Assembly: GCF_003704095.1 (NCBI RefSeq)
Contig: NW_020844463.1
Location: forward strand, 186,001-250,000
Direction of reading: 5' to 3'
Length of the DNA stretch: 64,000 nucleotides
Source: Pocillopora damicornis
Lineage: Eukaryota
Positions within the stretch are counted from its first letter, which is position 1. The number at the start of each line of letters is the position of its first letter. The translations under genes were made by a program, and so were the position numbers. Positions 1,947 through 50,900 of the stretch are shown here, one piece after another. The notes below the pieces were generated by a model. That model was not told where the DNA came from and made no database searches. It worked only from the letters and a program-made list of their open reading frames with translations.

Positions 1947-3938
1947 CACTTTGAGTCCCTCATGAAGTCCATCGAATACCCTTGACTCTTGCAAACAAAC
2001 TTCAAATTCGCTCGGCGAAACCTTTTCAATCCAAACCAGCATTGCGTCGTATTTCCGGCCTTTCTTGGTGTGGTGCGGAGTGACGTGAACTGTAGGAGTT
2101 GTTTTGAAGACCTGAATTCAACAAAAAAAATTAAATGTCACTCGTCGCAAAATAGCATTATCTAAGAAAAAATGGTTTCTGGAGAATCTTCCAGGCCAAA
2201 AGATCGATGCAAAACTAAATTGACTAGAGTAAGGTAAATCAAGGGTCACTCTATTGAATCATTTATACATGAGGCACTTCGATTAGGAAAACTGCGCATA
2301 ATCAAAAAACTAAAAAAAAAATTAACAACAACAAAAAATGGCAAAGCAGACGGCTTTTTACACAAAGCCCATTTAGATTCCCAACAAACAATTTCAATTA
2401 GCTGCAGGCATCGAGATTTGAATAAAGGGGTCATATGAAACCCAGCACTTTTAACAACTTGGTCACTGAAAACTCAAACAATCTTACATTCTTAAATGCC
2501 ACCCGGTTGCACTGTGATCCTGTAGTGAATTTGCTGAACAACGTTGCACCATGTTCAGCTCCTGTCTGTGGACCTTGAAATGCAAACCAGTCGATGGTGA
2601 AGTTATCTCCTGCTCCTCGGCCCCCTTCAACAACACAGGCTTTGAAACGAACATTGCTCACTTCTTCTACCCATACAAATATAGAATCGTAGACACTGGA
2701 CGATCCATTTCCACGGTTCACTGATGCGAATACGCTCACTGGTGTTCCCTTCTTAAAACTTTTGCTAAATGAAGCTTGCTGGCAAAGATAATCGTCATTT
2801 GCTTGAGTGAAGTGAATTTTTCCTCTCTCGATGACTAAAATAAATTATAGAATTCAGCTTAGTTAACCCCATGATGCCGTGTATGATAAATGTAAGGGTA
2901 TTTGGAATGCATCTTCAAGGCATACAGTCGCAATGAATAATCTGAACGTAAGAACTCAAATTATACAAGCAAATTGCCAAAGGAGCATGAGAGACAAAGG
3001 GATATGAAGGAGCCGTGACAAGTAGAATTAGCCGTTTAACTTGCGATTTATCGGCTTATGCGGTGGCGCGAGTTTTAGGAACCAATCAACCAAAGCGATG
3101 AAGTAAGACAATAAAGTTCCTGTTTCCTTTCAACGTCATTAACTAACAAAAAAAATCATAATTTTTGGGGTTCCAATGCGGGCATAACGAGGTAGAGGTC
3201 ACTTTTGCAGATCAAAATCCAACTTTTTGGAGCTGTTTTTTCATTACTTCACTATTTCGGAAATGTTACTTCATTTTGGAGAGATAATAAAACGTGCGCT
3301 CGGAGAGGAATGAGTGCCTCGCTCAGAGAAATGAAGAGGAAAGCTAACGAAGAAGGAGGCGATGGTTTGCAAGATATATTCGAAATTCCTTAATATTTTA
3401 TAATCTGTTTTTGCAATGAACTATTCGTCTGCTTCAACCTAATTTCACAAAGTTATTCATTCCAGGAGAGATGGTTTATTATTTTTGCGAGTATCGGTTA
3501 TATATTTATTGTTCAAGATACTGGGAGTTGTGCAACCATTTAGAAAAAGATGAGTATTGATCCCAAATGTCATAAATATCAAATGAGTAAGTATTTGTAT
3601 CTGCATTACTTGTATTTGAAGCTACTGAGTGCCGTGTAAATTTGATAAAACTGAAATGTTGGGACTGTCGATTAGCCGGCAAACACCGTAAAAAAATTGA
3701 TCTAATCTTCAGAAATAAATGTTAATTTTAAAAGGAACGATTCAGCTTTATCTGCTTCGACACTAGCTTCGCAACTTCCGATCCTTAATACTACTGAAGT
3801 TTTACAAGGGGTAAAACTGGGCGGTGAAAGATGAAAATAAAATCAACAACATTAAAAAAACTTACCATTTCCTTCGACACTGATGAGTATAAAGAAAGTT
3901 ACCAGCACCAACAATAGTTGCCTCGCAGAAGGCACCAT
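1947..3938 (-). CDS. Gene A (5' part): secreted H-type-lectin-like repeat protein, paralogue of gene B; presumably continues beyond the left edge
   Basis: Exons 3866-3938 (MVPSARQLLLVLVTFFILISVEGN, signal peptide), 2488-2834 and 1947-2111. All have GT/AG sites and an open frame, and their lengths (73/347/165) equal gene B exons 1-3. Confidence 0.88.
2488..2834 (-). CDS. Gene A exon 2 (repeat 1 and start of repeat 2)
   Basis: VIERGKIHFTQANDDYLCQQASF...IDWFAFQGPQTG...QCNRVAFKN; closely similar to 14859-15205. Confidence 0.9.
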
Positions 3939-6793: not shown

Positions 6794-7482
6794 CTAATTA
6801 TGGCAAACAGCACTTGCATCCTCATGATGACCGCAGTTGTGATACCAACGATACCTACGGCGATACCACCCCCAGTAGTAGTAATAGTAGTAGTAGCTCC
6901 TATTCTCATACGGACAGTCCAGCAATGATTCCTCTTTACCTTCGCAGGAAATATGGTATCGATGAATAGGACCCGAGCCTTGCCCGTAAGCCGCACCACG
7001 AGGTGCGGAGGTTGCACCCTTAAAGCCCAACTCACGGCAAACGACATTGGCATCATTCAAATTCCAGGTGTGGTCACACACGGTGCCCCATTTGCCTCCC
7101 TCGTAAATTTCAACACGGCCATAGTGGTGGGATCCTCCCGCTAACCGAACAACAGATGAACCATGGGTGCACTTCACACCAGCGTCCCGTTTATGCGTGC
7201 AGTCGTGCTTCCCCCATCCTCGATGTCTGCATTCATGGAGATAGGACTCACTTCCTGAACAAGACAAGTCGTCGAGCCATATTGGTCCGCTTCCTTCGCC
7301 ATGTTGAGCGCCCTTATAAACTTGTATGGCTCTTTTGTAACCAAGCTGTTTACATATTACGTTAGCATCATTCAAGTCCCAGGCATCGTCGCAGATGGTC
7401 CCCCATTTGCCATCGTAGAAAACTTCCACTCTGCCAGTTGACCGGCTGGTGCTGTTTATGCGCACGCTTCCATCGGTAATAG
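6794..7482 (-). CDS. Gene B terminal exon: two group-A (6-Cys) SRCR domains
   Basis: GRVEVFYDGKWGTICDDAWDLNDANVICKQLG...; GRVEIYEGGKWGTVCD...HEDASAVCHN*. Confidence 0.95.
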
Positions 7483-10400
7483 CTGACAATAAAGCAAGTG
7501 ATATTTTGTTCTCGGGTAACAAAGTAAATAAAATTCAAGCATGAGTGCGTCAAAATTAAAATAAAATAATCCTTCGTAACTGTGCGTTTTATCGGTTTCT
7601 GTGTCTAACTGTTCTGGCATGGAAAATGCGAATTATTGACAACGTTAATAAAATTCCGCTAAAGAAATCATCACATTTACTGACTCAGTCAGCTTTAAAA
7701 ACTCTCTACGGTGGCCGATTTAAATAATTAACTCGGTTTGTGAAACCAAATTATCTTGTTATACCCCACCAACGCAGCACCACAGTTTTCGTAAAAAAAC
7801 CTATTACCCTTACATAATATACTGTACGTGTGTTTCTTACTCAAAACCACCCTACCTCGATAACGTGCGCGAAATCCCCCAAATTCCTTAGAGCCATCAG
7901 AAGTAAATTTCACGAGAAGTTCGTTAGATGTGCTTGTCAAAGATTGCTTGGGGAGAGTATTTCCAAACAGAGTACCAATTACGGGAGCAGATCGTGACAG
8001 GCCATCATACACGGTAACGATGTCGACTTTATCCTCGGTATCCAAACGTATAAATACAAGTTCAATATGTCCATTGGTGGTTATGTTCCACGAGCAATCC
8101 ATTTTGCTTTTATAGGTTACTGAAACTCCAGGCTCATTTGACTCAATATATCCCATTGAATCGGACTGGACAACAGTCACATTTGCACAGGAGGGTATTA
8201 CCGTGGCGTTCGGTGCTGTGAAATTTAAAACAATAAGCTTCTCTCCCATAACTCCAGTCTAAACTGCATCAAAATTCACTTTTCTTTTTAATCTTGTTTG
8301 TCGTGATAATGCAAAAAAATAATTTTAAAGAATACCGTATACGAATTACAGTGAAAGAAAAACTGTGTAGCTGATACAACGTGTTAAACAATTTATCACT
8401 ACTGAACATTGAAAATGGCCCAACATGAAGTGTAAAATGTCACTTAAAGGAAGAAGGGAAATAAACCTTGGTGCGCTCTATACTTACCGCCACAAGTCTT
8501 TCCGGTTCCAGCCAACCCTGGAAAACATCTACATTTGTAGGTGCCAGGAATATTCTCGCAGACAGCTTGGGCATCGCACGTGAACGTTCCCAATCGACAC
8601 TCATTCATATCTGTTTCCAGATGAGAAAGATAATAGCAAATTAGCTACAATGACTGTACAGTCCAATAGCGAGAACTTGCTCTTGCCAGTATAAATGGTG
8701 CCTGGTATTTACTCAGTTTTGTGTGTTTCAACAGAAAATAAGGAATGGGGCATTTAATGTAACACCATCATTTGTCAGATCTCAGCGGTATCGAATTCTG
8801 TTTATGGGTTGAAACATACGATTAACGAGTGTTCACCAAAGAGAAGCGTTCTGAGTTTGTTTACAAGGCTCTTAAGTGGTTAATTGTTGATTGAATTGAG
8901 AAAAAAGGAAGAAAGAAACGAATGAAACTCAGTGATATCTAAATTAATAACGTTAGAATACCCTTTTAACGAGAATTAAACCAACCTTCGCAGTTCTTGT
9001 TTGCATCCAAACGGAATCCTTTATTGCACTTACAGGTGTAAGAGCCTTCATTGTTGATGCAATGGGAATCATGCGGGCAGTGATAATTGAAGTCTCTACA
9101 TTCATCATAATCTGCAGGGGAAGAAAAATTTTGATGACATTTTCGAAAGACAATTAAAAATATATAGCAGCCCAAACTAAAGCTAGCCAACTTAAGAGAA
9201 GATGCGTTAACCAACATCGTGCATGGAGATGATAGCTTCATGTGTAAATTATGCTTACTAAGCGATGAGCTAACTTTAACCAACAGAAAGAACGAGAAAT
9301 AGACATTTACAAAGTATTGTAGAACATCCTGGAAGTTTAGAAACCAACTATTCTGGTAGAATTTCATCAAAATTACGTAATTTGATGAAGATTCTAGAAA
9401 GTTCCATGCTGTGTCATCAGAAGTTCAATTATGCGTGTCAACATGACTAAGCATTCTACAAATTTCCAGAAACTGCTCTTTACATTCCCTATCCATAACA
9501 CTAAGCCGACTGTGACATGTGTACCTTCAGAAAATTTTAGGTGTGCTCATACTTCCAGAGGGTTTAAAAGGCCTGATATCCCATAGCAATAGAAATGATT
9601 GTTATCTTCACCAACCTTTCTTGCAGGTAAATCTGTGACAATCAGTACAGTTCACGTCATTCCACTCGTAATGATGGTTTTTGAGGAAGCCAAGAGTATG
9701 AACACAATCTTCATTGCCATAGTTGTTTGGTTGGCCCTTCGCCCAGTTCTTAAATTTAAATGTGCTCCCATCGCTCCACACGAACTTCCCTTCTGAGTTG
9801 ATATCGGTGAGCCCTAGCCAAGAGTGCTCTCCGCCATGCAGACTCTGGACATAAACGTTTTCTTCCTGGCTGTGTATACTTGGAAGGTTAGCTCCCTGCG
9901 TGGCGCATTTTCCCTGGCTGCTGCCCCACGAATCACATGCAGCCACTTGTCTATAGCAATACCCTCTGAAATAATTCCAGTCGTCGTCGCAAATGCTTTC
10001 TATAAATTAAACGATAACACACTTTCGTTTATTGTATCCAGAGTTTCAGCATCTATTATACTTGTTCCTTTATCTAAGCAATCATTTCGAACGTAAATTT
10101 GCATAAAATAATTTGTGAGGTAAACAATAAGTAATCTGTGAAACGGGAATGAAATTTTAAGTTATAGTCCATAGATAGGGCATAAACTTTTATAAATGTA
10201 TCCCTTCTCATTTCAGAATAATTTATTTTTGTTGCTGTTGTTCTATCATCGATGCATGCCATCTCTTCACCTCTCCGTCTATCCTGGCTTATTTTTCTGA
10301 ACATGCAGGAAACACAACTTTATATCTAAGGTCATCAGAGGCACAAAGACACTCAGCGAACATTGGACTCTAAAATCATATTTTACTTACCTCCCATCAC

Positions 10401-13400
10401 TGCGTATGACACATTTAGTGGGTCAAAGCGTTGTACATACAGTTCTTTGACACAGATTCGAAATCCAGAAGTAGTGATAGACTAGGAAGGGAAAAAGTTA
10501 TTAAAGATACACTAAATAAAAATTCTCATACTCAAACCCCAAATAGGAGTAACGGAAATAAACAGAGAACAACCAAACAAAAATTGAAAAAGAACATAGA
10601 TGCAACAAAGAAAAAGAACAAAGAAGCTTTATAAGGGTATTGGATACTTCACAACACCAAGTTAGCATCCGTGAAGCATAAAATTTCATCGGTACGTAAG
10701 TTTCCTGTAATAGTCCATAGCTTTTGAGGACCGTTAGGTTTTAAACATCATCCTTATGCGCCTAAACCAATAAGCACGAAAAAAATTGATTCTTTACGAA
10801 TATCGCAGCTGTCTATTAATTAAATGAAAGATGACTAATGATTAAGACAAAATTTAGAAATAAAGTTACAAATATGAGATATAAACTATTACAAGAGTGT
10901 AGAAGCAGCGTCAACGAGGAGAAAAACAAAAACAAAGAAGGATTCCATTTTCACTTGCTTACCTCGATCCAGCTCACGATTCCATTACACTCTGCTGCAG
11001 CATTGCCTCCACTGGTAGAATGTCTGGCAGTTACCAATATTGTTGGTGGGTAGGTGTAAGCCGACTGAAGGTAACTCACATCCTTTTGATAGAAGTAATA
11101 ATTGATTAATCGATTAGCCTCTTTTACTGCCTTCAGGATAGGCGATCCCAAGTGCAGATTGTCTCAGCTAGGCATATTCTTGGTTAAGAAAGCTCCCCAG
11201 CGAGGTTTGAGATAAATACACGATTAAAATTAATTGAAAATTGATTCTGTATCAATAAAAGGCTTCCAGAACGAAATATAACTTTATTTGAATTAGGGTA
11301 TACATCACTCACCTTACAGAAAGCGTAGTTGTAATTTATTGATGGCAAACCAACATTCGGAAACATGACTTCGCTGCTCTCTTTAACCATCGGTCTAGGT
11401 GTTTTGCCAATTGCAAGCCAGTTCTGATCCAAAAGATAAAGAGACGAAGAATCAGTTATCGTTTTTACTTGGTATCTATCAAATTTTCTCTCTGATACCA
11501 AATTCACATTCATTAGGCATTCATTTTATTCATTTTTATTGATACTATGTAAAGTCGTGTATTTTATGAGTCAATGTTGTAAATTTAAGATTCTTAGAGA
11601 TGAAAATAGAGCCGGTAATCAGCGTACCGGATTTCTGTGGAGGTTGAGAAATTTCATGAAACGACAGCGAATAAACGACACATCCAAAAATAAAGATGGC
11701 ATCGAACTAGACCAAGATTGGCACGAATCGAGTGCTCTCGGTTTTCCATATGTTTTAGCCAACTTTAAATTTGAATTTGACAATTCCTACCACTGATATA
11801 TCATCATGAACTCCAGCGAAGTTTTGAAGCTCCCTGAGACAAATCTGAAAAGAACTCGTGGAGACATCCTCAAGCCACACGGTGCTAGCATCGTGCCTCA
11901 GGCTTGATCTGTAATGGACAGCTGTGGTGAAGACTTGTGGTGGCTCAGAATACTTCCCCTAAGGAAAAAAAAGAAAATCCTACGGCTTAGGTCAGGTTGA
12001 TTTAAAGGAGAAGAAACGAACCAAAAAAGTTATTGATTTAGCTCCAGTCTTAGCGGTTTTTAGCGTAAAGATATCTAAAGGTTTTGGGGACGGGGCAATA
12101 TAAAAACAAGAAAAAGAAACATTTTAGCTATCTGGTAATAGCCACCGCGATGACCCTTAAACTGATTAAAGAAGAGGAAAGGAAGGAAAAAGAAGTGTTG
12201 TGAAATGAAAAGGGTTAACCCACGAACTATTAGCTTGATTTCAAATGTGAATACAGCAGAGAACGTACTTTTGGAAAAGAAACGGTCCGGCAAGTGGTTC
12301 CAGTCCACCAAGTTAAGAACATCTCCTCGCCTGCTACTCCTCCAGGTGGGGCTCCCTGATAGGCCATCCAGTCAATTAAAGCAAAGCTGTCCGCAGGGTA
12401 GTCATTCCTTCCAGCTCGCGTAACGCAGGCTGTGAACTGAGTAGTGTTGATGCTCTCGACCCAAGGTGTGGTGGCCTCGTGTACCAAAGTATCATCAGAA
12501 TAGTTGAAGTGATTGACAGTCAGTTGTACGTAAATTTTCATATGAGGATAGAAAATGAAGGGTTTAAAATCAATCACTTCACACTGATCCTCTGCCCACG
12601 AGGGTGTGTTCTGGAACTCGTGTCTGCCTTTCTGCATCGGAAAACCTACAATCATGATGAAAACCATCTTTGATTAAGTCCAGGTAAAAGTGGCGTCTTT
12701 ATTTGAAAGTTAATTTGTGGGAAGGGGAAAACTCGAGGGTCTCAAACAGGTAACCAACCGAAGTATCCAGTATGTTCTCCATGATTGCTTGGAAAGATAT
12801 TTTTTTGCCAATTAGTGGTTAGAACAAGGTTACTACATAACTTTAGCAATTTAAGCAGAGATAAGGGCAAGATGATGGCTAAAAAGTAAGTCAGTTGAAC
12901 TCTGCAAACCACTCATTGCGTAGTTTGCTTACCTCTGCAGCTTCCTGGATGGTAGTTGGTGTAGTTTCCACGTGTTTTACAAATCTCTTTTTTGAGGAAA
13001 CACATGTTTTTGAACGTGCGACCGTTGGAAGCACAGACTTGTTCCTCGTATGATGGGCAGTTATCCTTACAGATACAATCAAATCTCCAGGGGGTATAAG
13101 CAAAGCAAAAGCTTTCGTAGGTACAGTTAACATTTCTGCACGGATCAAGGTCTGAAAACGAAAGAAATATTATAAATGATTGCTAAATTGCATTTAATAA
13201 TAAGGAGTGGACGTCAAAGAAAACATGAAATAATTTTCACACTTACCCCCAATAACCAAATAGTCTATGGACACATCACTCCTTTGACTATCGTATCCTG
13301 CCCAGTCTTTCATACAAATTTGAAAATGTTTCGCGGTCACTTCCTACAACATGATAGTACAAGAGTTCCAGAAACCAAAAGACAACGAAAGGAAAACAGC

Positions 13401-16003
13401 AAAAACAAATGCAACAAAAAGGGAGGAAAGCACACAAAAGGAAAAGGAAATAAAGAAAAGATTTGACAAAAAAGAAAATGAGCAAGGGAAGAATGGGAAG
13501 AAAAGAAACTCACACAAAATCGAGAGAAGAAAATTACCTTAAATACACCAGGAAAGCAGAAAAATAAGGAGAATGATGTGATTAAGAAGTGGGCGACATG
13601 AGCCAAGAAACAGAAGTCACTAACTCCAATCGAACATTTGCATTACGCATCTTTTCAACCATTATGGTAGGCGAATTTATGAGTGATGTGCAAAGGATAT
13701 TACATTTCAAGTTAAAGTCACCTCCATCCAGGTGATTAAAGGTTCCTTATACTTTGGGCTACAGCCATCGTGCGACTTATTTCCTTTGGCAGCATCGAAA
13801 ACAGTAGTGAGAACCACAGGCGGCGTAAAAAATGGCTCGTCAAATTTGATAGTCTGTCAATAAATAAAAGAATATATAGAATTAGAGTAACTGATTTAAG
13901 TTTGAATCCTGTGAAAAAAGGCAGAGTGTTGTGTTAAGCTAATTTAGATCAAATTAACAGAAAAAAGATTATGGCCTCCGTCATTCCTGACTCTCGCAAT
14001 AAGGCAGGAGTTTCTTAGACAAGAACCTACTGCGCCTATGTCACTACAATATTAACTAATAATTTTGAAGAAAGTAGACTTACCCTACAGAGAGCATACT
14101 TTTTTTGTGCTGCAGGTAACTCCTTTGATGAAAACATGATGCTTTTCGACTCTTTACACCTCCAGGAAGAAGGATAATTCTCGAAAGCCATCCAGTCCTT
14201 GAACAAGAAAAAAGGAACAATTTTCATTAAGTTTTGGCGAGCTAAACACTAAATTTTGGGCACATCCATATTAAATTGATTTGAGTACGAGCACCAAAAC
14301 ATCAACACAATTAAATGAGCGACAGACTGAAAAGATGATAATCATAATATTAATGCTTGAGAAAATATATGAAATTATACTGATTATAACGATGATAACA
14401 ATAAATAATTTGAAATAGAGAAAACAACGGAGGAGGAACTGCATATGGATGAGCAAGGAGACACAAACCAATTTATACCTATTTGTATGCACAAATTTTG
14501 TACATCTCCGGAAAAAAATGAAAAAACAACACAGAAAAAGATAACGGTTGTACAAGTAATCACTTACCACCCTGAGTTTTTCATGAGATCCATCAAATAC
14601 CCTGGATTCACGAAGGCAGACCTCAAATTCACTTGGAGAAATATTCTCGATCCAAACTAGCATGGCGTCATGCTTCTGGTCCTTGATTCTGTGCTCAACA
14701 GTGACGTGAACTTTCGGAATTGTTTTAAAGCCCTGAATAGGGAATTAAGTGTTGGAGAAACGTTACATATTATTTGTTTCTTACTTCATATGTCTAAGTC
14801 AACTCTCTACACCAATTACCCCTAATGTCTTCGAAAGATTAGGTAAAAAATATCTTACCTTTGGAAAAGTCACCCGGTTGCATTGCGATCCTGTAGTAAA
14901 TCTACTAAACATTGTTTCACCTTGTTGAACTCCTGTCTGTGGACCTTGAAATGCAAACCAGTCGATAGTGAAATTATCTCCATTTCCTCGACCTCCTTCA
15001 ACAACACAGGCCTTGAAACGATCGAATCTTATATCCTCCACCCATACAAAAATGGAATCGTATACACTGGACGATCCATTTCCACGGTTGACTGAAGCAA
15101 ATACCCGTACGGGTATACCCTTGGTGAAACTTTTGGTAAATGTGGCATATTGGCAAAGGTAATCGTCGTCGGCTTGACTAAAGTGAATCTTTCCTCTCTG
15201 CACTCCTAAGTAGAAATTATGGTCTTAGGTTATCTAAAATAGTACTACATATCTGCGAATTAAGAATGCCTTTAGAATTTTTAGAAATGCCATACACTTC
15301 ATCACGCTTAGGGGGCCGAGCTTGCTAATTATTGTTCAGAGGGTGGCTTGTTTTTTTTTACCAAAAATAGCAAATATTCTAGATGTGTAAAAAAGGTCTA
15401 CTGAGAATATTTCAGGATATTTTCTTGGAGTTTTTAGTATCCGCTACGCTGTCATTAGATTATGATTTCATCGCTGTAAAAGGGGTTAGAGGCACTTGCA
15501 CCTATTCACTGTAAATATTCAACAAAATTGAATTTTTTATACGTTTTTGATGTTGTCTTCCTTGGCAAGTCTCAGAAATTTTGAACGATCGTTCACCTAT
15601 TTTTCCTTCAATATTGTTTCCCAGACCCCTCAACCATTTCTTTCTATGCCAACCTAATTACAGAAGTTTCTTCGTTGTAGGCTAAATAATCAAAATATTG
15701 CGATTGCATTTTTCAAGCTCATCTAGATGCGAAACTTTATTTGGTGGTGTACGGTATTCCCTTTAACAAGATTTTATGTATCACGTTGCGCTTGGGTGTG
15801 TCATTATAAAAGAATTCACGAAGCTCTGAATTTCGATTAATGCTTTACTAAATAACGCTAATGAAAGGTATATAATAGCCTGACTTGAAAAAAGTGAGAG
15901 GTAAAACTTGAAAGATTCAGAGAAACCAACCTTTTCCTTGGACGACACCAAAGATGAAGAAACAAACCAACAACAATGCTCCCTGCCTTGCAGACAGCAT
16001 CAT
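6794..16003 (-). CDS. Gene B: secreted multidomain lectin/scavenger-receptor protein (SP, 3 H-lectin-like, FOLN/Kazal, 3 H-lectin-like, CTL, 2 cbEGF, CUB, 2 SRCR), ~1231 aa, DMBT1-like C-terminus
   Basis: 17 exons with GT..AG sites and a continuous frame: 15931-16003, 14859-15205, 14568-14732, 14084-14197, 13722-13853, 13247-13343, 12933-13151, 12269-12645, 11791-11958, 11313-11423, 10963-11082, 10391-10481, 9616-9999, 8986-9111, 8488-8610, 7856-8215, 6794-7482. Sum 3696 nt = 1232 codons including the stop. No TM segment seen. Confidence 0.9.
7856..8215 (-). CDS. Gene B exon 16: CUB domain
   Basis: GYIES...Y...MDCSWNI...LVFIRLDTE...VTVYDG...LLVKFTSDGS...GGFRARY; phase-1 introns on both sides. 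Confidence 0.92.
8488..9111 (-). CDS. Gene B exons 14-15: two calcium-binding EGF domains (8986-9111, 8488-8610)
   Basis: DYDEC...CINNEGSYTCKC and DMNECRLGTFTCDAQAVCENIPGTYKCRCFPGLAGTGKTC. Confidence 0.9.
9616..9999 (-). CDS. Gene B exon 13: C-type lectin domain
   Basis: CDDDWNYFRGYCY...WLGLTD...WSDGS...NWAKGQPNN...EDC...WNDVNC...FTCK. Confidence 0.93.
10391..12645 (-). CDS. Gene B exons 8-12: second triplet of H-lectin-like repeats
   Basis: Five exons (377/168/111/120/91 nt) repeating the motif C..V.F...(F/Y)..PP.V.....W(V/L/I)E.I....F..C......(D/N)W.A. Confidence 0.85.
12933..13151 (-). CDS. Gene B exon 7: follistatin-N/Kazal domain
   Basis: DPCRNVNCTYESFC...CICKDNCPSYEEQVCASNGRTFKNMCFLKKEIC...HPGSC (a different frame from the listed ORF). 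Confidence 0.9.
13247..15205 (-). CDS. Gene B exons 2-6: first triplet of H-lectin-like repeats
   Basis: Five exons (347/165/114/132/97 nt) with the same motif and intron phases as exons 8-12. Confidence 0.85.
15931..16003 (-). CDS. Gene B exon 1: signal peptide
   Basis: MMLSARQGALLLVCFFIFGVVQGK; 73 nt, phase-1 donor GTTGGT. Confidence 0.85.
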
Positions 16004-18930: not shown

Positions 18931-21900
18931 AGATGCGAAACCAAATGAAATACTTATATATATGTAAATTAGCTTTTCTGGTTCCAAAAATATATGTAAA
19001 AACTATAAAATTTCAGTCACAACTGAAGTCAAGAAAACATGCACACTATTCTGAAAGAGGTCTGGCAACAACTCCCTCTTGATTGTCAAATTCGTCTGGC
19101 TGCACATATCAACTCGTTGTTGCCTGCACTAGACCTGTTTGGGGACTTACTACCAATTACTTTCATTTTAAGATCAACTACACTGTATTAGCTACACAAT
19201 AAATATATGTTTCTAACATTTACATATTTCTTATAAATATTTCTATATTTTCATATATTCTTAGTGCATTATAGCATGGCAGGGGATCTGTTTCTTTCCG
19301 CAGTCACATCGCTGTTCTTATTTGAATTAATGTAGTACCTTTTTTGTGTTAAGAGCCTGTCCACGAGAGCGCCAGACAGTCGTGCTACATGCCATCTCAC
19401 CGATTTCAATAAAACAATTATTGCTCTAGGCGGTCGCTTAACCAAATAAACCTACATTTTTTTGCTCTTTATACAAGATGACTAATGAAGAAAGGTAAAA
19501 AATATGAAAAACTTTCGATATTTTTTGTAAGAATGGAAAATTTCACGTTTAGAGAGATGCATGTAGGCGAAAAATCGATGGGAAAATCGTAGCGTTTCTT
19601 TTTTCTGTCGTTTATTAATTTGGAGATTTGCTAAAATCAAAAAATATGGCTTTGGTACGACACAAAACATTTATCAGTCTATAATTTGATTGTTTATCGT
19701 CATCATTGCTCATTTTAGGAGATTTTAAAGTCACACGCTGCATGTTAGTTGACATTATTACATGTTCCACTACGCTACAACTTCGGCTTTTACAGACGAG
19801 AAATTCAGCGCTCTCGCTTGAGAGCAAATATCAATAGTTCTATCAAACTAAAACTGTGCTTCTATCCCGAAAATAAAATTAAAACAGAGTTGTCGTTGTC
19901 ACTTACCGCCATAAAACATTTCCATCCAGAACTCCGCTAAGCTAACATCTGTTGCGTGACCCAAAGACTCCGTGGGAATTATTTAAGCGCGTTGTTCACG
20001 CTGTCTGCTAGATAACAATTTCAGAATAATCTGCAGATCTCTATGATTATTTGCTTGCTTCGATCGTAAAATATCTTCATTTTTTCTCAAGCATTCTATT
20101 ACTACATATAAATCTACATCTCTCTAGATCAAGTGTTACCGGCGATTAATTGCATGACTTATGAAATTTATTTATTATTATGAGTCAGCAGTAGCAGTAC
20201 CTGTACCCTCTTCTGCAGTCTTCGTCTAAATTTTGCAAGGTGCCTCCTTATCTTCTGCCTTGTTCAGTCAGTTTCGACCTCTGAAGCTAGATCATCGACA
20301 TCGCCCTCTTTGTCCTCATTCATATTGACCCCGTCAATAAACAAATTTTTGTTACGGCAGATAACCGGCTGAAGTATCGAGCGATTTGCTGCTCTATCAA
20401 CCGGTCAGTCTTAGACAACATTCCTGGCCGATGCGTCTCTTAAACTCGATATTTGGGAAGTCACATTAGAGGCGGTTGCCTTATTTGTTTCCTCCCCTGT
20501 CCAGCACACGTCTAAGAGATAATTCTTTGCTTTCTCATATACGAATAGTAAATACAGGCGTGACATTTTTCGAACGTTACATGTACGAGTACGTGATCCG
20601 TTTGAGGATCACAGATTTAGTGTAAATATTTGACCCCTCAGCATCACGTAATTTCTCTAGTTTACAGAGGTCTTAAAACGCTTCTTTGCATGGATTTGCA
20701 TTCTGCGGGTAGAAGGCTAAAAGCGAATTTCTAGGGCGTAATTGCCTTTGATTTCTCAATTGAAGTTGTCGCAAACACAGTTTTTGGGGGTCACGAAACA
20801 ACAAAAACTTATCAGGACCAAGTTTCATGTTCTAATGAGAATAAATAGCAAATAAAAACATGTTCTCTTGAGAAATACAGTTATAGATAACAGATGCTCT
20901 TTAAAACAAATAGTGATAGAAAAGGTTTCTGTTCTGCTCAATTTTGACTTTTCATAGCTTACTTCCAAATCTGAGGGAACGCGTTGAGGGAATAAAAAAA
21001 ACATACACGTGTGATAATTCACGGAAGAGTACATTTCAAGGTTGCTGAATGTCTCTTTTGAATAAGCAGCACGCCAGTGAAAGCTAGTTTCGAGGCATTG
21101 ACTGAACGACAAGTCAGAGACGCCAATAAGAAACAAAAATATTGCTTGTTGAAGGAAAATAGTGGAACCGGAACTGGAACCGGAAACAAATTTTAAAAGT
21201 TCCGATTAAACATCTGCACAGGCTTAGTTAGCAGAGGTAGCTTAGGTACCAAACCTTCTACGTTTTAAGGAGCTATGTTAAGGAGATCTGCGCTGTACCT
21301 TAACACTAATCCTCTCTCCTTTATTTCGGGCGTCCCGTGCGTTATTGCCAAGAAAATTGCCATGCAATTTCAAACATAGAATTAAGCAACAATGTTCTGT
21401 AGACTCATTCAATTGTATTCATAGTAACGCGTACAGAAACTATTTGATTGTTATCAAAGTTATACAAATTAGGTATGATTGAATACACGAACTGAAAAAA
21501 TTGAAACGACCAGTAACCCTGCACTAACCTAGACGACAAGGTGAAGCCTACAGTCAACATTAGTTTTATTCCTGCCCAACGACTTATTTCAAAGACTCTT
21601 CCTTGCCACTTGCGGGCTCTGCCTAGAAACGTTAAGCGGCAATTTGTCAATGTGAGCACGCTACAACAAAGTGGTGCATTGCAGTACTACGAAATGAATT
21701 ACTTATCACTTTTTTGTTTGCAACAAATCTATGAGTAACAAACCACACTAGCATCCTCACTACATGTACATTCATGTTTTCCCCAGCCAAGGAACGAACA
21801 ACAAGGCAACATTGGCTCTCCCCCTTGGCAGTAAACACCATCCATCCTGACTGGGTCAGAACCCTGAACGTCTTCAGTGCAACAACTAGCCCGAGATGCA

Positions 21901-23019
21901 CCAGAAAAGCCACGCTAACGACACACCACACTGGCTTCGTTAATTGTCCAGTGATCATCACACACTGTGCCCCACTCCCCGTTGTGATAAACTTCTGCGC
22001 GTCCTTAGTTTGCTCTACCGCCCATTAAACGGATAGTGACTGTATAATGAACGTAAATAAAATGATTCCTGAGTGAGAGATATAATTAATTGGCCATAGG
22101 ATACCTCTGAGACAAGAAACTTTGAGACCTTCATATTTAATTCTGCTTGCAAAAAAAAATAAGAATTGGGACCTTTTGCTGTTCCTGTTTGCTATAAAGG
22201 ACTTCAGTAATTTACCTGTGCAGGACTGGTGACCATTACTGAAATATCCGGGCGAATATCTACATTCATATGAACCAATTCTATTGACACACTGAGCGTT
22301 CGAATTGTAGGAGATAGATCCCGTCTGACACTTATCCACATCTGTTAAAGCAGTATGGGAACCCGTCAGAGTTAAAGCTATATTTTCAAAATCGATTAAA
22401 TTTTGAAAATATTAAGTAATATGACCGTGTGGAATACAATTCGGTTTGTAATCATACGGGCAATTGACAAAACCGGACGACCGCGAAGCACACACTGACA
22501 ACGAAATGAGCCTTCAGTATTCTGACAATTGGCATTCGGATCACAGGCGGGAATGGAAGAACTACATTCGTCAACATCTGCAAAGAAATCAAATTGTCAG
22601 TAGTGGAGTTTCGATTGATCATTTTTACTGCTTGTAACTGTACAAGGAAATATAAGGAGAAGTGACAGGAGACCTATTCAATCTCGCTGGTGTTATTTTT
22701 TATCACTTGGGCGCACTTTGTTATATCGAAACACTCTTCGTGAAGGATGGTCAAATCAAAACTAGACAACTAAGATAAGTTTTCAATGCCAACGTAAAAT
22801 ACATGCCTGAATTACTTCGCCTTTACCTAATAACCGACAGCATACTAAAAACAATACATGCTTTCTTAAAACTGCAAGTTTTCTAATAATAACTTCCTGA
22901 CATTCGGCAAGTTCGTAAGAAAATTATCAACTGTCTTTCACTTTTATACCTCAAAATTGTCTCACTTTAATTCGAATTGATATAACCACAATCCACATAC
23001 AGTACTATGCAAAAGTAAT

Positions 23020-47639: not shown

Positions 47640-47965
47640 CTAGTTATTGCACGCCACACTGGCATCCTCACTATGTACACAGTTATGTTTTTCCCAGCCA
47701 GGGAACGCACATCGAGATAACATTGCCTCTCCCCCTTGGCAGTAGACATCATCCATCCAGACTGGGTCAGAACCCTGACCGTATTTAGCGCAACAACTAG
47801 CCTGAGATGCACTAGAGAAGCCGAGCTGACGACAAACCACATTGGCTTCGTTAATTGTCCAGTGATCATCACACACTGTGCCCCACTTCCCGTTGTGATA
47901 AACCTCTACACGGCCGTAGTTTGCTCCACCGCCCATTAAACGGATAGGAGCGTCCTCATTAGTGG
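47640..47965 (-). CDS. Gene E terminal SRCR exon
   Basis: IRLMGGGANYGRVEVYHNGKWGTVCDDHW...ASCCAKYGQGSDPVWMDDVYC...SEDASVACNN*. Confidence 0.9.
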
Positions 47966-50900
47966 CTGTGTGATCAACATACTACTGACTAAGTATTGGA
48001 GGTACCTGAGATCAAACTGGCCTCAGCTGTGCTTGAATCATTTAAATTAGGTTTTAAATCATCCGAGGAACGGTCTCGGGAGTGCTGTGGAAATCATGCT
48101 TAACCCTTTAACTCCCAAGATCTTATTGTCAATTCTCCCCTGGTGGTAGATGAGAATAACAAAAACCTGCCTGCTACGTTCGAGGAGAGCAATAACAAAT
48201 AACATTGGCAAAAAGTAAAAGTTATCACCGAGAAGCAATGAAAGAAGTAACCATGGAGAAGACTTGGTTGAAAATATATTAAAATATCAAAATTCCAAAA
48301 TACATACAGTGTGAGAGAAATAAGGACATTTCGCCAAAACGAGCCCCTTTAGCAGTTTAGAAGTTTTCTTGCTATTGTTTTTGTAGTTGCTGCTGTTTTT
48401 AACTGCACTTACGTCGTTTTCAATAATTTTATAACACGAGCTGAGGTCGCTTACAGTGTTCAGAGATTGTACCAATTAAAATAAACTGAGAAGCAGAATG
48501 TCGCGGCAATAGGTCTTCCCTACCCAAAAATAATGTAGAAGACAAGAGGAGGAAGCGTAAGGATATAAAGGAAGAAGGATCCATCAACTGGATACTAAAA
48601 AATCAAAGCAATAACGAACAGGTGTGCTATAATAGGATTATAAGCCCTCTTAAATGGGTTTTTAGTCAATCAGAAATAACCTCCTAGCAATTCATCTAAT
48701 TTCCTTAGAAGTTTTTTTCAACTATACCTATTTCTTCTTCTTAGCTAAAGAGTGCCACTATAACACAATATATTAACTGGCCTAGGATTGAGACCATTGC
48801 ATCATCTACCTGGCAACCAAATGTGCCTTAAATAGCCTTACCTGTGCAAGATTTCCCATCACCAGAGAATCCACTCACACACTGACAGTGAAATGAGCCT
48901 TCAGTATTCTGACAATTGGCATTTGGATCACAGACGGGTATGGAAGAGCTGCATTCGTCAACATCTACAAAAATCAAATGGACAGTAGTGGAACTCCGAT
49001 TAATGACTTTTACTGCTTGTAACTCTAAAAGGAAGCATAGGAAGAAGTGACAAGAGACCTGTTAAATATCGGTGGTACTATTTTTTAACACCTGGAATAA
49101 CACAATTTAAAATTTTCCCCCCTCAACTCTCCCTCCTATACACCCTTAAATCTCTTGTTAATTCGATTTTCTGAAATTGATTCTTTCCGCCCTTAACTCT
49201 AAAAGGAAACAGAGCGAGAACTCCGCAAGAAAATTACTCTTTGAAGCTAAGCTTAAGGGATTTGAGTAACAGACTACCTGGTCATGCTGGTTGGTGTTAT
49301 ATGTTAACCAACTATAAAGAAATACGGACGCATATGGTTATATCCAACCACTCTTTCTTGGATGGATGTTAATATTCCTTGAATAACAAAGTTCGAAATC
49401 CCCATCCTACACATCCTCCGTAAGTCTCTTAATGATTCGATTTTCTAAAACTGCACTTCTACCTATTTATTGGTTCCCTTAGAGAGGAATCGGAGAGTAA
49501 GGAATCTACTTCAAAAACATAACACACTTACATGACTAAGGCCCAAACATCTGCGCGTACCATGCAACCACCAAAACTGCCTTAAAAAATAGCCTTACCG
49601 ATGCAAGATTTCCCATCACCAGAGAATCCACTCACACACTGACAATGAAATGTGCCTTTCGCATTCTGACAATTGGCCTTTGGATCACAGACGGGGGCGG
49701 AAGAGCTGCATTCGTCAACATCTGCAAAGAAATTAAACAATCAGTAGTGGAGCTCCGATTGATGACTTTTACTGCTTGTAACTCTAAAAGGAAACACAGG
49801 TAGAAGTGACAAGAGACCTGTTCAATATCGGCGATGTTATTTTTCAACATATGGACGCACTTTGTTACATCGCAACACATTTCGTGAAAGGGTGTTCAAA
49901 TTTGTTGGAACAACACCATTCAAAACTTTCAATGCCAAAGTAAAGTGCATGTCTGAAATACTTCGTCTATACCTAATAACCGACAGCATACTAAAAACAA
50001 TATATACTTTCATTAAACTGCAAGTTTTCTGATAAGAAATAAGTCACTTCTTGAAGGTAGGGCTGAAAGGGATATCTGACAAGTGACCTGGTTATGCTGG
50101 TTGGGGCGTTTCGTGCCCAGTCACTTTGTACCCGGCTTTGTCGATTCGCACTCAGTTGGTTGAGTCACTTTGTACCCAAACTAATCAAGTAGATTGTTCA
50201 TGCTTATATGTTAAACGATAAGAATAAACAGAAATAAACGAATTTACAACCGTCTATAACAAAGAGATAAAAGTCTCACTTTCGCTGGCTCTTATTTTGT
50301 TTTATATTTTATTACTTATAAAGTATTACTTTTATTTTATTGTTTTTATATATTTTTTTAAATAAACGAATTTACAACCGTTTATAACAAAGGGATAAAA
50401 GTGTCACTTTCGCTGGCTCTTATTTTGTTTTATTTCCACCTTCCTTCAGTCTCTTTTTTATTCTATTTTCTAAGAGTGTGCTGGTAACTATTTGTGTTCT
50501 CATTATCTCAAGAGAGGGACCAAAGAGTAAAGTGTCTAGCCCCAAAATACAGCACACTCACAAGACTAAGGCCAAAACCTCGGCGTTCATCAAGTTACCA
50601 CCCTATCTCTCAAGAATATCCTTACCGGAGCAAGATTTCCCGTCAGCAGAAAATCCAGTCTCATCTCATTTCCTTACAAGTTTTTTTCAACTCTACTTAT
50701 TTCTTCATCTTGGCTAGAGTGCCANNNNNNNNNNNNNNNNNNNNNNNNNNNNNNNNNNNNNNNNNNNNNNNNNNNNNNNNNNNNNNNNNNNNNNNNNNNN
50801 NNNNNNNNNNNNNNNNNNNNNNNNATCACCAGAGAATCCACTCACACACTGACAATAAAATGTGCCTTCCGTATTCTGACAATTGGCCTTTGGATCACAG

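What the first reader, a model, noticed from the sequence alone, without database searches (positions are those of the whole stretch)
6794..16003. Secreted all-in-one recognition protein joining two lectin classes, Kazal, EGF, CUB and SRCR
Seen: a clean 17-exon frame with a signal peptide and no TM or GPI-like tail. Known: CTL, CUB and SRCR are pattern-recognition/mucosal modules (e.g. DMBT1) and Kazal domains often inhibit proteases. I do not recognise this architecture from any named gene. Inference: a mucus or matrix agglutinin for microbes or symbionts.
Basis: partly seen in the sequence, partly recalled or inferred. Interest (0 to 1): 0.75.

Follow-up and report, generated by a model that had tools for sequence, protein, structure and literature searches.

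The report
Coral LePin-type lectin with SRCR tail
This is a real, expressed stony-coral gene for a secreted multi-lectin protein of the already named LePin family (tied in a soft coral to the uptake of symbiotic algae), here with an extra scavenger-receptor-like tail, so it is a variant of a known kind and not a new kind.

Summary
A minus-strand gene of 17 exons runs from 16003 to 6794 (3693 coding bases, 1231 codons). It encodes a signal peptide, two five-exon cassettes of three H-type-lectin-like repeats each around a Kazal exon, a C-type lectin, two calcium-binding EGFs, a CUB and two SRCR domains, and no membrane anchor. RNA contigs from four studies show 11 of the 16 splice joints directly and a twelfth through loose ends, linking every domain class into one transcript.

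The first ~840 residues (through the EGFs) match LePin, a secreted lectin of the soft coral Xenia. The LePin papers report that it binds algae and that its knock-down lowers alga uptake.

Thirteen database protein clusters carry the full architecture with the CUB-SRCR tail. Five named stony-coral species are among them, and all are annotated "uncharacterized".

The gene lies in a tandem cluster in a genome that matches Pocillopora damicornis. Relatives carry other tails on the same chassis (fibrinogen, D8C, TLDc, olfactomedin, pentraxin). All module boundaries are phase-1 introns.

Likely role: a soluble glycan-binding bridge or agglutinin. This rests on homology; nothing was tested.

The parts
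15931..16003 (-). Exon 1: ATG and signal peptide (24 codons plus 1 base; ends in phase 1)
   Evidence: Hydrophobic core with small residues at -3/-1, judged by eye; no signal-peptide predictor was on hand. Homologue N-termini are alike. No RNA joint was examined.
14859..15205 (-). Exon 2: H-lectin-like repeat 1 and the start of repeat 2 (first exon of cassette 1)
   Evidence: H_lectin E 0.1, below cut-off. 41% identical to exon 8 by MAFFT (36% by tblastn). Family profile E 1.9e-46, partly by construction because exon 2 is a row of A3.
14568..14732 (-). Exon 3: core of H-lectin-like repeat 2
   Evidence: H_lectin E 0.011. 42% identical to exon 9. E2/E8-type profile hits it at 6.7e-10.
14084..14197 (-). 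Exon 4: end of repeat 2 and start of repeat 3
   Evidence: 34% identical to exon 10. Abuts exons 3 and 5 in P0388.
13722..13853 (-). Exon 5: middle of repeat 3
   Evidence: The loose end at 13345 in 4 of 4 RNA runs continues with the letters at 13724 onward.
13247..13343 (-). Exon 6: end of repeat 3 (cassette 1 ends in phase 1)
   Evidence: RNA joint 13151/13247 in 4 of 4 runs.
12933..13151 (-). Exon 7: cysteine-rich lead-in plus Kazal domain (phase 1-1)
   Evidence: Kazal_2 E 3.2e-8, 34 bits. RNA joints on both sides in 4 of 4 runs. The loop C-P-S-Y-E-E-Q-V-C is conserved in the family.
12269..12645 (-). Exon 8: H-lectin-like repeat 4 and the start of repeat 5 (first exon of cassette 2)
   Evidence: No Pfam hit of its own. 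Profile of homologues 2.5e-69, by construction.
11791..11958 (-). Exon 9: core of repeat 5
   Evidence: H_lectin E 0.0047. (5.6e-10). RNA joints.
11313..11423 (-). Exon 10: end of repeat 5 and start of repeat 6
10963..11082 (-). Exon 11: middle of repeat 6
   Evidence: RNA joint 11081/11312 (cut +1) in 3 of 4 runs settles the acceptor at 11082 rather than 11064.
10391..10481 (-). Exon 12: end of repeat 6 (cassette 2 ends in phase 1)
   Evidence: 100% protein identity to the neighbour paralog at dS 1.69, which indicates strong constraint.
9616..9999 (-). Exon 13: C-type lectin domain with QPN...EDC...WND (phase 1-1)
   Evidence: Lectin_C E 1.6e-20; motif shared with 95 of 137 family proteins; dS 0.108 against the neighbour, which suggests exon-scale gene conversion.
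8986..9111 (-). Exon 14: calcium-binding EGF 1 (phase 1-1)
   Evidence: EGF_CA 1.9e-10. One X12 contig spans EGF2-EGF1-CTL.
8488..8610 (-). Exon 15: calcium-binding EGF 2 (phase 1-1)
   Evidence: EGF_CA 1.3e-9. Joints in 4 of 4 runs.
7856..8215 (-). Exon 16: CUB domain (phase 1-1)
   Evidence: CUB 1.6e-16. Joints in 4 of 4 runs.
6794..7482 (-). Exon 17: two SRCR domains, then TAG (6796-6794)
   Evidence: SRCR 3.2e-61, two stretches. Joint 7482/7856 in 4 of 4 runs. RNA was not examined below 7401.
6840..6905 (-). Tyr/Trp/Arg-rich insert (with a (TAC)n run) in the last loop of SRCR 2
   Evidence: Read. Absent from all 13 homologue C-termini printed. Not covered by RNA here.

Best explanation
The gene encodes a secreted, soluble member of the anthozoan LePin lectin family with an added CUB-SRCR-SRCR tail.

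Shown here: the exon structure, its expression as one spliced mRNA from exon 5/6 to exon 17, the domain set, purifying selection, membership of a tandem paralog cluster, and the same full architecture in five named stony-coral species.

Inferred: how it works. It would act as a multivalent glycan-recognition bridge. The two triplets of H-type-lectin-like repeats and the Ca-dependent C-type lectin (QPN/WND site) would bind sugars on microbes or Symbiodiniaceae. The two calcium-binding EGFs would form a stiff stalk. The DMBT1-like CUB-SRCR tail would either bind further, polyanionic microbial ligands or dock the complex to a host partner. The outcome would be agglutination or hand-over to phagocytic receptors, as proposed for Xenia LePin.

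The Kazal module more likely serves as a conserved spacer between the triplets than as a classical inhibitor. This paralog need not be the one that recognises algae.
For: One gene, expressed. Eleven RNA joints plus one loose-end joint in 4 studies chain H-lectin cassette 1, Kazal, cassette 2, CTL, EGF, EGF, CUB and SRCR.

Family.
- A profile of exons 2 and 8 finds 426 proteins at E <= 0.001.
- Of 10 long hits scanned, 8 carry H_lectin above Pfam's cut-off, 5 carry Kazal_2 above cut-off and 5 carry Lectin_C, in the same order.
- P0190 (Pocillopora verrucosa, 1199 aa) has the whole set: H_lectin 69.4 bits, Kazal_2, Lectin_C, EGF_CA, CUB and two SRCR.
- Thirteen clusters carry CUB+SRCR on this chassis.
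- All 16 exons after the signal-peptide exon match such proteins in order at 40-89% identity. They match P0388 at 69-100%.

Six repeats. The E2/E8-type profile hits six places in 5 of 5 full-length homologues, and hits window exons 3 and 9 at about 6e-10.

LePin function, from passages I read. [quoted passage not shown] It is a secreted lectin found on algae. Its RNAi lowers new alga-containing cells and alga attachment. [quoted passage not shown]

Constraint. dN/dS against the tandem neighbour is 0.00-0.21 in all 16 exons compared.

Secreted. There is no anchor or relic of one.

CTL site. QPN...EDC...WND is kept, as in 95 of 137 family proteins.

Tail. Its SRCR part is 33-56% identical to DMBT1/SSC5D-type proteins.
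Against: - No binding, localisation or cell-type data exist for this gene. The function is carried over from an octocoral protein that lacks the CUB-SRCR tail.
- The genome holds at least 12 near-full exon-8-type copies, so roles may have diverged.
- The H-lectin assignment is weak on the window's own exons (13-17 bits against a cut-off of 24).
- Only 3 of 111 exon-8-type fragments reach H_lectin at E <= 0.001.
- Two profile searches of PDB sequences found no H-type lectin, only chance-level neuroserpin and nanobody rows.
- I could not compare with the Xenia LePin sequence itself. Its three printed peptides map only loosely.
- Contigs cannot give expression levels.
- Four joints and the Tyr-rich loop were not seen in RNA.
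Confidence: 0.62

Rival explanations
1. It is the functional counterpart of Xenia LePin in this coral: the specific secreted lectin that marks Symbiodiniaceae for uptake by gastrodermal cells.
For: Same chassis as LePin. A 2026 preprint on Stylophora pistillata, of the same coral family by my recollection of taxonomy, reports in passages I read 'multiple paralogs of LePin' expressed in a transitional alga-hosting cell state (10.64898/2026.07.18.739195). The DMBT1-like tail recalls the DMBT1 requirement in Xenia.
Against: At least 12 paralogs in the genome carry many different tails, and nothing singles this one out. There are no cell-type data for it. Authors working on Oculina arbuscula could not confidently identify LePin (PMC12278269).
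Confidence: 0.18
2. It is a structural extracellular-matrix, adhesion or skeletal-matrix protein. Its EGF, CUB, SRCR and follistatin-like Kazal modules would serve matrix assembly, not microbe recognition.
For: Calcium-binding EGF, CUB and Kazal/follistatin modules are common in matrix proteins (general knowledge). The Kazal loop is conserved rather than variable. Sources name some relatives 'Aggrecan core protein', 'Fibrillin-1' and 'Uromodulin', but these are automatic names.
Against: Seven of the 13 modules are lectin domains, and the family's one tested member binds algae. None of the 12 papers listed in a skeleton/mucus search holds 'H-type lectin'. The main text of a Stylophora skeletal proteome paper holds none of six terms tried. 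Supplements were not seen.
Confidence: 0.12
3. Its main activity is protease control: the Kazal domain inhibits a serine protease, microbial or host, and the lectins merely target it.
For: Kazal_2 is above cut-off with all six cysteines. LePin's name itself refers to a 'kazal Protease inhibitor' domain.
Against: The loop that would hold the reactive site reads P-S-Y in most of the family. Of 113 matches among 137 proteins, P is kept in 112, S in 88 and Y in 101. From memory, reactive-site loops of true Kazal inhibitors are hypervariable and have a protease-matched residue at that place. There is one Kazal against seven lectin domains. No inhibition data exist.
Confidence: 0.05
4. The 17-exon model merges two genes, or is a decaying pseudogene copy in a tandem array.
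For: Tandem paralogs lie 2.9 kb apart. Some RNA contigs are chimeras between the paralogs. Two of the 12 exon-8-type copies elsewhere in the genome contain a stop.
Against: RNA joints link every module from exon 5/6 to exon 17. All exons are open. dN/dS is 0.00-0.21. There is colinearity with annotated full-length proteins in five named species.
Confidence: 0.03

Closest known systems
[quoted passage not shown] (Hu et al., Nature 2020, PMC7332420; bioRxiv 10.1101/2022.12.13.520278), and the 'LePin-like' proteins of other anthozoans
   Same: N-terminal signal peptide and no membrane helix. H-type lectin domains on both sides of one Kazal domain, followed by a C-type lectin and EGF domains. The Xenia antigen peptides printed in the preprint find their best places in the H-lectin cassettes (exon 5 or 11, exon 10 or 4) and at the CTL/EGF border of homologues, in that order.
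   Different: This gene adds a CUB and two SRCR domains after the EGFs. It is one of at least 12 paralogs, four of them in tandem on one contig. No functional data exist for it.
DMBT1 / CUZD1-type soluble scavenger receptors (SRCR plus CUB)
   Same: The tail holds CUB and SRCR domains. The SRCR part is 33-56% identical to proteins that their sources name DMBT1 or SSC5D. In Xenia, DMBT1 and CUZD1 are markers of the same cell type as LePin, and DMBT1 RNAi lowers alga uptake.
   Different: There are only two SRCR domains and one CUB, and no zona pellucida domain; the protein ends right after SRCR 2. Each SRCR has six cysteines by my count. SRCR 2 carries a Tyr/Trp/Arg-rich insert not seen in 13 homologues.
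H-type lectins (Helix pomatia agglutinin, Dictyostelium discoidins; SLL-2 of the octocoral Sinularia is recalled, not checked)
   Same: Pfam H_lectin is the only family hit on the repeats and is well above cut-off in full-length homologues. [quoted passage not shown] That fits repeats coming in threes of about 95 residues with no linker.
   Different: Here the three domains sit in one chain, twice. Repeats 1 and 4 are very divergent: 3 of 111 relatives reach the Pfam model. There is no sequence-level match to any solved H-type lectin. Fold and sugar-site residues were not tested.
Follistatin/agrin-type Kazal modules
   Same: A six-cysteine Kazal domain preceded by a short cysteine-rich stretch in one phase 1-1 exon.
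   Different: It is a single copy, flanked by lectin triplets. The lead-in stretch hit no Pfam model, and its likeness to a follistatin N-terminal subdomain is my recollection only.

Membership tests
LePin family (as defined in 10.1101/2022.12.13.520278, Methods passage seen) | Predicted H_lectin domains | tested here: met
   With a caveat. Single exons give 13.1, 16.3 and 17.4 bits (cut-off 24), because the repeats are split over exons and the joined model was not searched. The close homologue P0190 scores 69.4 bits. Six repeats per protein are found in 5 of 5 homologues, and window exons 3 and 9 are hit at about 6e-10 by the exon 2/8 profile.
LePin family | Kazal domain between the H-lectin blocks | tested here: met
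   Kazal_2 34.0 bits against 22.8. It lies between cassette 1 and cassette 2, with RNA joints on both sides.
LePin family | C-type lectin (CLECT) followed by EGF domains | tested here: met
   Lectin_C 74.2 bits; EGF_CA 41.2 and 38.5 bits. One RNA contig spans CTL-EGF1-EGF2.
LePin family | Signal peptide and no transmembrane helix | tested here: met
   By inspection only; no SignalP or TMHMM was on hand. Exon 1 has a hydrophobic core. There is no hydrophobic C-terminus and no downstream helix.
LePin family | BLASTP match covering at least 60% of Xenia LePin | not testable with these tools
Only three 15-residue peptides from the preprint could be placed, which is weak.
LePin family | Binds Symbiodiniaceae and promotes their uptake | not testable with these tools
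   This needs bench work.
DMBT1/CUZD1 scavenger receptors | SRCR and CUB domains | tested here: met
   SRCR 204.3 bits in two stretches; CUB 61.0 bits.
DMBT1/CUZD1 scavenger receptors | C-terminal zona pellucida domain (the feature is recalled; PF00100 stands in the DMBT1 rows, and that it is the ZP model is also my recollection) | tested here: not met
   No such hit on exon 17, and the stop follows SRCR 2 directly. The gene is therefore not filed as a DMBT1 member.
H-type lectins (Pfam PF09458) | Match to the family model at its gathering score | tested here: inconclusive
   Below cut-off on every single exon. Exon 8 has no hit at all, and 3 of 111 of its relatives reach E <= 0.001. Above cut-off in whole homologues.
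H-type lectins | Beta-sandwich fold, trimeric assembly, sugar site between protomers | not testable with these tools
Kazal-type serine protease inhibitors | Six-cysteine Kazal pattern | tested here: met
Kazal-type serine protease inhibitors | Reactive-site loop suited to a target protease (criterion recalled) | tested here: inconclusive
   The loop P-S-Y-x-E-P/Q-V is conserved in 113 matches among 137 family proteins. This is unlike the variability I recall for true inhibitors. There is no assay.

The most novel reading that the evidence does not exclude
Stony corals may use the LePin chassis (two H-lectin triplets, Kazal, C-lectin, EGFs) as a constant carrier onto which different recognition or effector heads have been shuffled. 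The heads include CUB-SRCR, fibrinogen, D8C, TLDc, F5/8-C, olfactomedin, pentraxin and Ig.

Three observations point that way. Every module border is a phase-1 intron. The genes sit in tandem arrays. The chassis shows signs of being homogenised by gene conversion.

On this reading the CUB-SRCR form is a 'Rosetta-stone' fusion of two activities, LePin and a DMBT1-like scavenger receptor, which in Xenia are separate genes acting in the same alga-uptake pathway. It predicts that the two work as one physical unit.

In addition, each triplet would be a single-chain pseudo-trimer with three non-identical sugar sites, free to diverge one by one.
Probability: 0.3. Interest if true: 0.6.

Novelty: new variant of a known kind. 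Interest (0 to 1): 0.38.

Why it matters
LePin is one of the few coral proteins with bench evidence for a role in recognising symbiotic algae. Its authors propose it as a target for steering symbiont choice.

In stony corals the single Xenia gene corresponds to many paralogs. One group could not confidently identify LePin in Oculina arbuscula (PMC12278269). Another reports multiple paralogs in alga-hosting cell states of Stylophora.

This window supplies three things:
- an exact, RNA-supported exon model for one such paralog in a Pocillopora genome;
- evidence that a whole subfamily joins the LePin chassis to a DMBT1-like tail;
- a simple exon-phase rule that explains how tails were exchanged.

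That gives concrete candidates for specificity determinants, namely the faster-evolving first triplet, CUB and SRCR. It also gives a testable link between two steps of the Xenia uptake model. It does not reveal a new kind of molecule.

Tried and rejected
- Sequence search of solved structures with the exon 2+8 profile and with a 111-row profile found no H-type lectin. It gave only neuroserpin (E 0.0045 and 1.3) and a nanobody (E 0.65), which I take as chance.
- Pfam on all 111 exon-8-type fragments: 3 of 111 reach H_lectin. So repeats 1 and 4 cannot be called H-lectin on their own.
- A region search with the C-terminal half of P0219 was swamped by multi-SRCR proteins. Of the 120 rows listed out of 4601 hits, the only chassis protein was the query itself. 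It says only that the tail is DMBT1-like. I did nothing further with those rows, which include vertebrate and primate proteins.
- Recent duplication or whole-gene conversion with the neighbour is rejected. Introns do not align and dS is 0.57-2.4. Only exon 13 has dS 0.108.
- A membrane-anchored or read-through form like the neighbour's is rejected for this gene.
- Alternative isoforms suggested by loose ends: two of the four unexplained loose ends are the neighbour paralog's sequence, so those contigs are chimeras. Two (X1 at 12337, X15 at 7438) stay unplaced.
- The exon-8 tree (133 rows, 125 columns, quick method) is too short to settle how often tails were gained. It shows only that tails are mixed inside a starred clade of 33 rows.
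- Skeleton or mucus role: no support in the texts searched. Supplements were not seen and I did not ask for them. The domain-architecture figures of the LePin papers (Extended Data) are not held, so CUB-SRCR paralogs may already be drawn there.
- Literature claim: that the CUB-SRCR form is not described in words rests on searches and on the passages read only.

Full report
**What is there**

On the minus strand between 16003 and 6794, open frames and splice sites define 17 exons.
- E1 16003-15931, E2 15205-14859, E3 14732-14568, E4 14197-14084, E5 13853-13722, E6 13343-13247.
- E7 13151-12933, E8 12645-12269, E9 11958-11791, E10 11423-11313, E11 11082-10963, E12 10481-10391.
- E13 9999-9616, E14 9111-8986, E15 8610-8488, E16 8215-7856, E17 7482-6797, then TAG at 6796-6794.

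The lengths sum to 3693 bases, or 1231 codons, and the intron phases fit throughout. Phases were checked by arithmetic, every search used single exons, and the step of searching the joined model was left out.

**Expression and splicing**

Twelve RNA runs on record hold part of the stretch. I laid contigs of four of them, from four studies, on 7401-13400. All were poly-A, oligo-dT or cDNA libraries.

All 11 predicted joints from E6 to E17 appear with CT..AC ends at the predicted bases.
- Eight joints are seen in 4 of 4 runs.
- Two are seen in 3 of 4 runs.
- The joint 9111/9616 is seen as a joint in 1 of 4 runs, with fitting loose ends in the other three.
- A loose end at 13345 in 4 of 4 runs continues with the letters of the E5 end, which gives a twelfth joint.

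Single contigs chain EGF2-EGF1-CTL, CTL-E12-E11-E10, E8-Kazal-E6 and CUB-EGF2. Introns show no or little depth, for example 9201-9600.

RNA also fixed the E11 acceptor at 11082. These four joints rest on unbroken colinearity with the annotated protein P0388.

**Domains**

Exon-wise Pfam scans give the following, each above the curated cut-off.

| Exon | Pfam family | E-value |
|---|---|---|
| E7 | Kazal_2 | 3.2e-8 |
| E13 | Lectin_C | 1.6e-20 |
| E14 | EGF_CA | 1.9e-10 |
| E15 | EGF_CA | 1.3e-9 |
| E16 | CUB | 1.6e-16 |
| E17 | SRCR, two stretches | 3.2e-61 |

H_lectin is the only family hit on E2, E3 and E9, but it stays below cut-off (E 0.1, 0.011, 0.0047).

E2-E6 and E8-E12 are paralogous five-exon cassettes. 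E2 against E8 is 41% identical by MAFFT and 36% by tblastn. E3 against E9 is 42%. E4 against E10 is 34%.

A profile of E2/E8-type sequences finds six hits in each of 5 of 5 full-length homologues, at places that fit three plus three repeats. It hits the window's E3 and E9 at about 6e-10. Each cassette of about 285-289 residues therefore holds three H-lectin-like repeats of about 95 residues without linkers.

The caveats are real. Only 3 of 111 E8-type fragments reach the Pfam model. No solved H-type lectin is found by sequence.

**Secreted**

E1 has a typical hydrophobic core, judged by eye. The protein ends ...AVCHN. Nothing between the stop and the next gene encodes a helix or resembles the neighbour's anchor.

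**What it is**

The profile search of 1.84 billion representatives gave 426 proteins at E <= 0.001. Long hits repeat the order H_lectin, Kazal, H_lectin, Lectin_C, EGF.

A word-indexed search from P0001 listed 120 of 140 hits. Nearly all are from stony corals and sea anemones, and nearly all are named 'uncharacterized'. My hand tally of the precomputed Pfam column gives these extra C-terminal modules.

| Tail | Proteins (of 120) |
|---|---|
| D8C_UMOD | 25 |
| TLDc | 21 |
| Fibrinogen_C | 18 |
| CUB+SRCR | 12 |
| SRCR only | 1 |
| F5/8 type C | 2 |
| ALK/LTK glycine-rich | 2 |
| Olfactomedin, pentaxin, Ig, COLFI | 1 each |
| Other single cases | 4 |
| No extra tail, or truncated | about 31 |

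The names of eight tail types were confirmed on examples and of D8C_UMOD; the Ig and remaining labels come from my memory of the accession numbers.

With, 13 clusters carry CUB+SRCR on this chassis. They come from Oculina patagonica (5), Montipora capricornis (2), Pocillopora verrucosa (2), Orbicella faveolata (1), Acropora digitifera (1) and two unnamed metagenome proteins. Acropora millepora and the anemone Exaiptasia have an SRCR-only form.

**Literature**

[quoted passage not shown] - A preprint reports that it is secreted and found on algae and on the mouth surface, and that its RNAi lowers new alga-containing cells and alga attachment. [quoted passage not shown]
- Two 2026 preprints mention LePin homologues with 'more diverse' architectures in Palythoa and 'multiple paralogs of LePin' in Stylophora.

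I saw passages only. The figures that draw the architectures are not held, and I did not ask for supplements. I found no text that describes the CUB-SRCR form.

**Genome context**

The window is G000:C1098:186001-250000. G000 has 234,350,878 bases in 4393 contigs.

One of its contigs has the length (46,637) of the record that holds the P. damicornis protein pdam_00023371, and it encodes that protein's residues 193-317 at 100% identity. So the genome is, or equals, a Pocillopora damicornis assembly.

E8-type exons occur at least 12 times at near full length, two of them with a stop inside. Four lie in tandem on this contig at 136665, 152560, 183077 and 198269; the last is this gene.

The next gene downstream starts 2.9 kb after the stop. 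Its E1 lies at window 3938-3867, and it has all 17 exons in the same order. P0388 of P. verrucosa is its likely orthologue, since its identity to my exons runs the same way.

Introns of the two genes no longer align. dS is 0.57-2.4 for 15 of the 16 exons compared, but 0.108 for the C-lectin exon, which suggests exon-scale gene conversion. dN/dS is 0.00-0.21 throughout. The second triplet, Kazal and C-lectin are the most constrained, while the first triplet, CUB and SRCR change faster.

This gene has no trace of that.

**A rule in the exon structure**

Introns inside the cassettes are phase 0. Every border between modules is phase 1: signal peptide, cassette 1, Kazal, cassette 2, C-lectin, EGF, EGF, CUB, SRCR pair (arithmetic). 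That is the classical condition for exon shuffling (general knowledge), and it fits the many tails on one chassis.

In a tree of the E8 region (133 rows, 125 columns, quick method), this gene pairs with P0388 (support 99) and then with two Oculina CUB-SRCR genes (95). They sit inside a clade of 33 rows (99) that mixes CUB-SRCR 13, fibrinogen 6, ALK-GRD 3, TLDc 2, olfactomedin, Ig, SRCR-only and six without a tail. Either tails were exchanged repeatedly, or the chassis is homogenised within lineages. The short alignment cannot tell which.

**How it most likely works (inferred)**

The likely role is a soluble, multivalent bridge.
- Discoidin-type H-lectins are trimers with the sugar site between neighbouring domains (passage). 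It is untested.
- The C-lectin keeps QPN...EDC...WND, like 95 of 137 relatives. From memory, EPN marks mannose-type sites and QPD galactose-type sites, so QPN leaves the specificity open.
- The Kazal loop P-S-Y is conserved in the family, which argues for a structural role rather than an arms-race inhibitor.
- The SRCR tail is 33-56% identical to DMBT1/SSC5D-type proteins, but it lacks their zona pellucida end, so it is DMBT1-like and not a DMBT1.

In Xenia, LePin and DMBT1 are separate and both are needed for alga uptake. Their fusion here hints at a joint action.

**Verdict**

The architecture is a tail variant of a named, widespread family, annotated but unstudied. Interest is moderate.

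Noticed in passing
window 1947-3938 (minus strand), continuing in L001 (G000:C1098:176001-186000): A tandem paralog with the same 17 exons starts 2.9 kb after this gene's stop. Its last exon runs ...VVCHN, a stop, then an intact hydrophobic helix and a basic tail. This gene lacks that segment.
   Followed up: partly
window 9607-10012: The C-type lectin exon is 96% identical at DNA level to the neighbour's (dS 0.108), while all other exons have dS 0.57-2.4 and the introns do not align. This looks like gene conversion confined to one exon.
   Followed up: partly
window 6840-6905: A Tyr/Trp/Arg-rich insert with a (TAC)n run replaces the usual short G-W-G loop of the last SRCR domain. It is absent from all 13 homologue C-termini I printed. 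I did not check it in RNA.
   Followed up: partly
window 47643-51885 and 21732-22339 (minus strand): Further exons resemble the EGF exons (four hits at 48.8-51.9 kb, one at 22.2-22.3 kb) and the SRCR exon (47% and 39% identity), with no H-lectin exons nearby. They are probably other EGF-SRCR genes. N runs lie at 50725-50824 and 51890-51989.
   Followed up: no
RNA contigs laid on window 11311 and 12297 (run X5): Loose ends of these contigs are the neighbour paralog's sequence (L001 5887-5916 and 7073-7101). So assembled RNA contigs jump between the tandem paralogs, which is a trap for anyone who builds transcripts of this family from short reads.
   Followed up: yes
proteins P0104, P0120, P0132, P0135, P0068: Proteins of 270-400 residues consist of three H-lectin-like repeats and nothing else. 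Some have a Gly/Ser/Ala-rich start and a lipoprotein-like signal that looks bacterial. Single-chain triple H-lectins may therefore exist well outside Cnidaria. The sources are unnamed.
   Followed up: no
G000:C2193:899279-923755 and C2193:234452-246807: Two further clusters of exon-8-type matches lie on another contig, several in tandem. They suggest more LePin-like arrays in this genome.
   Followed up: no
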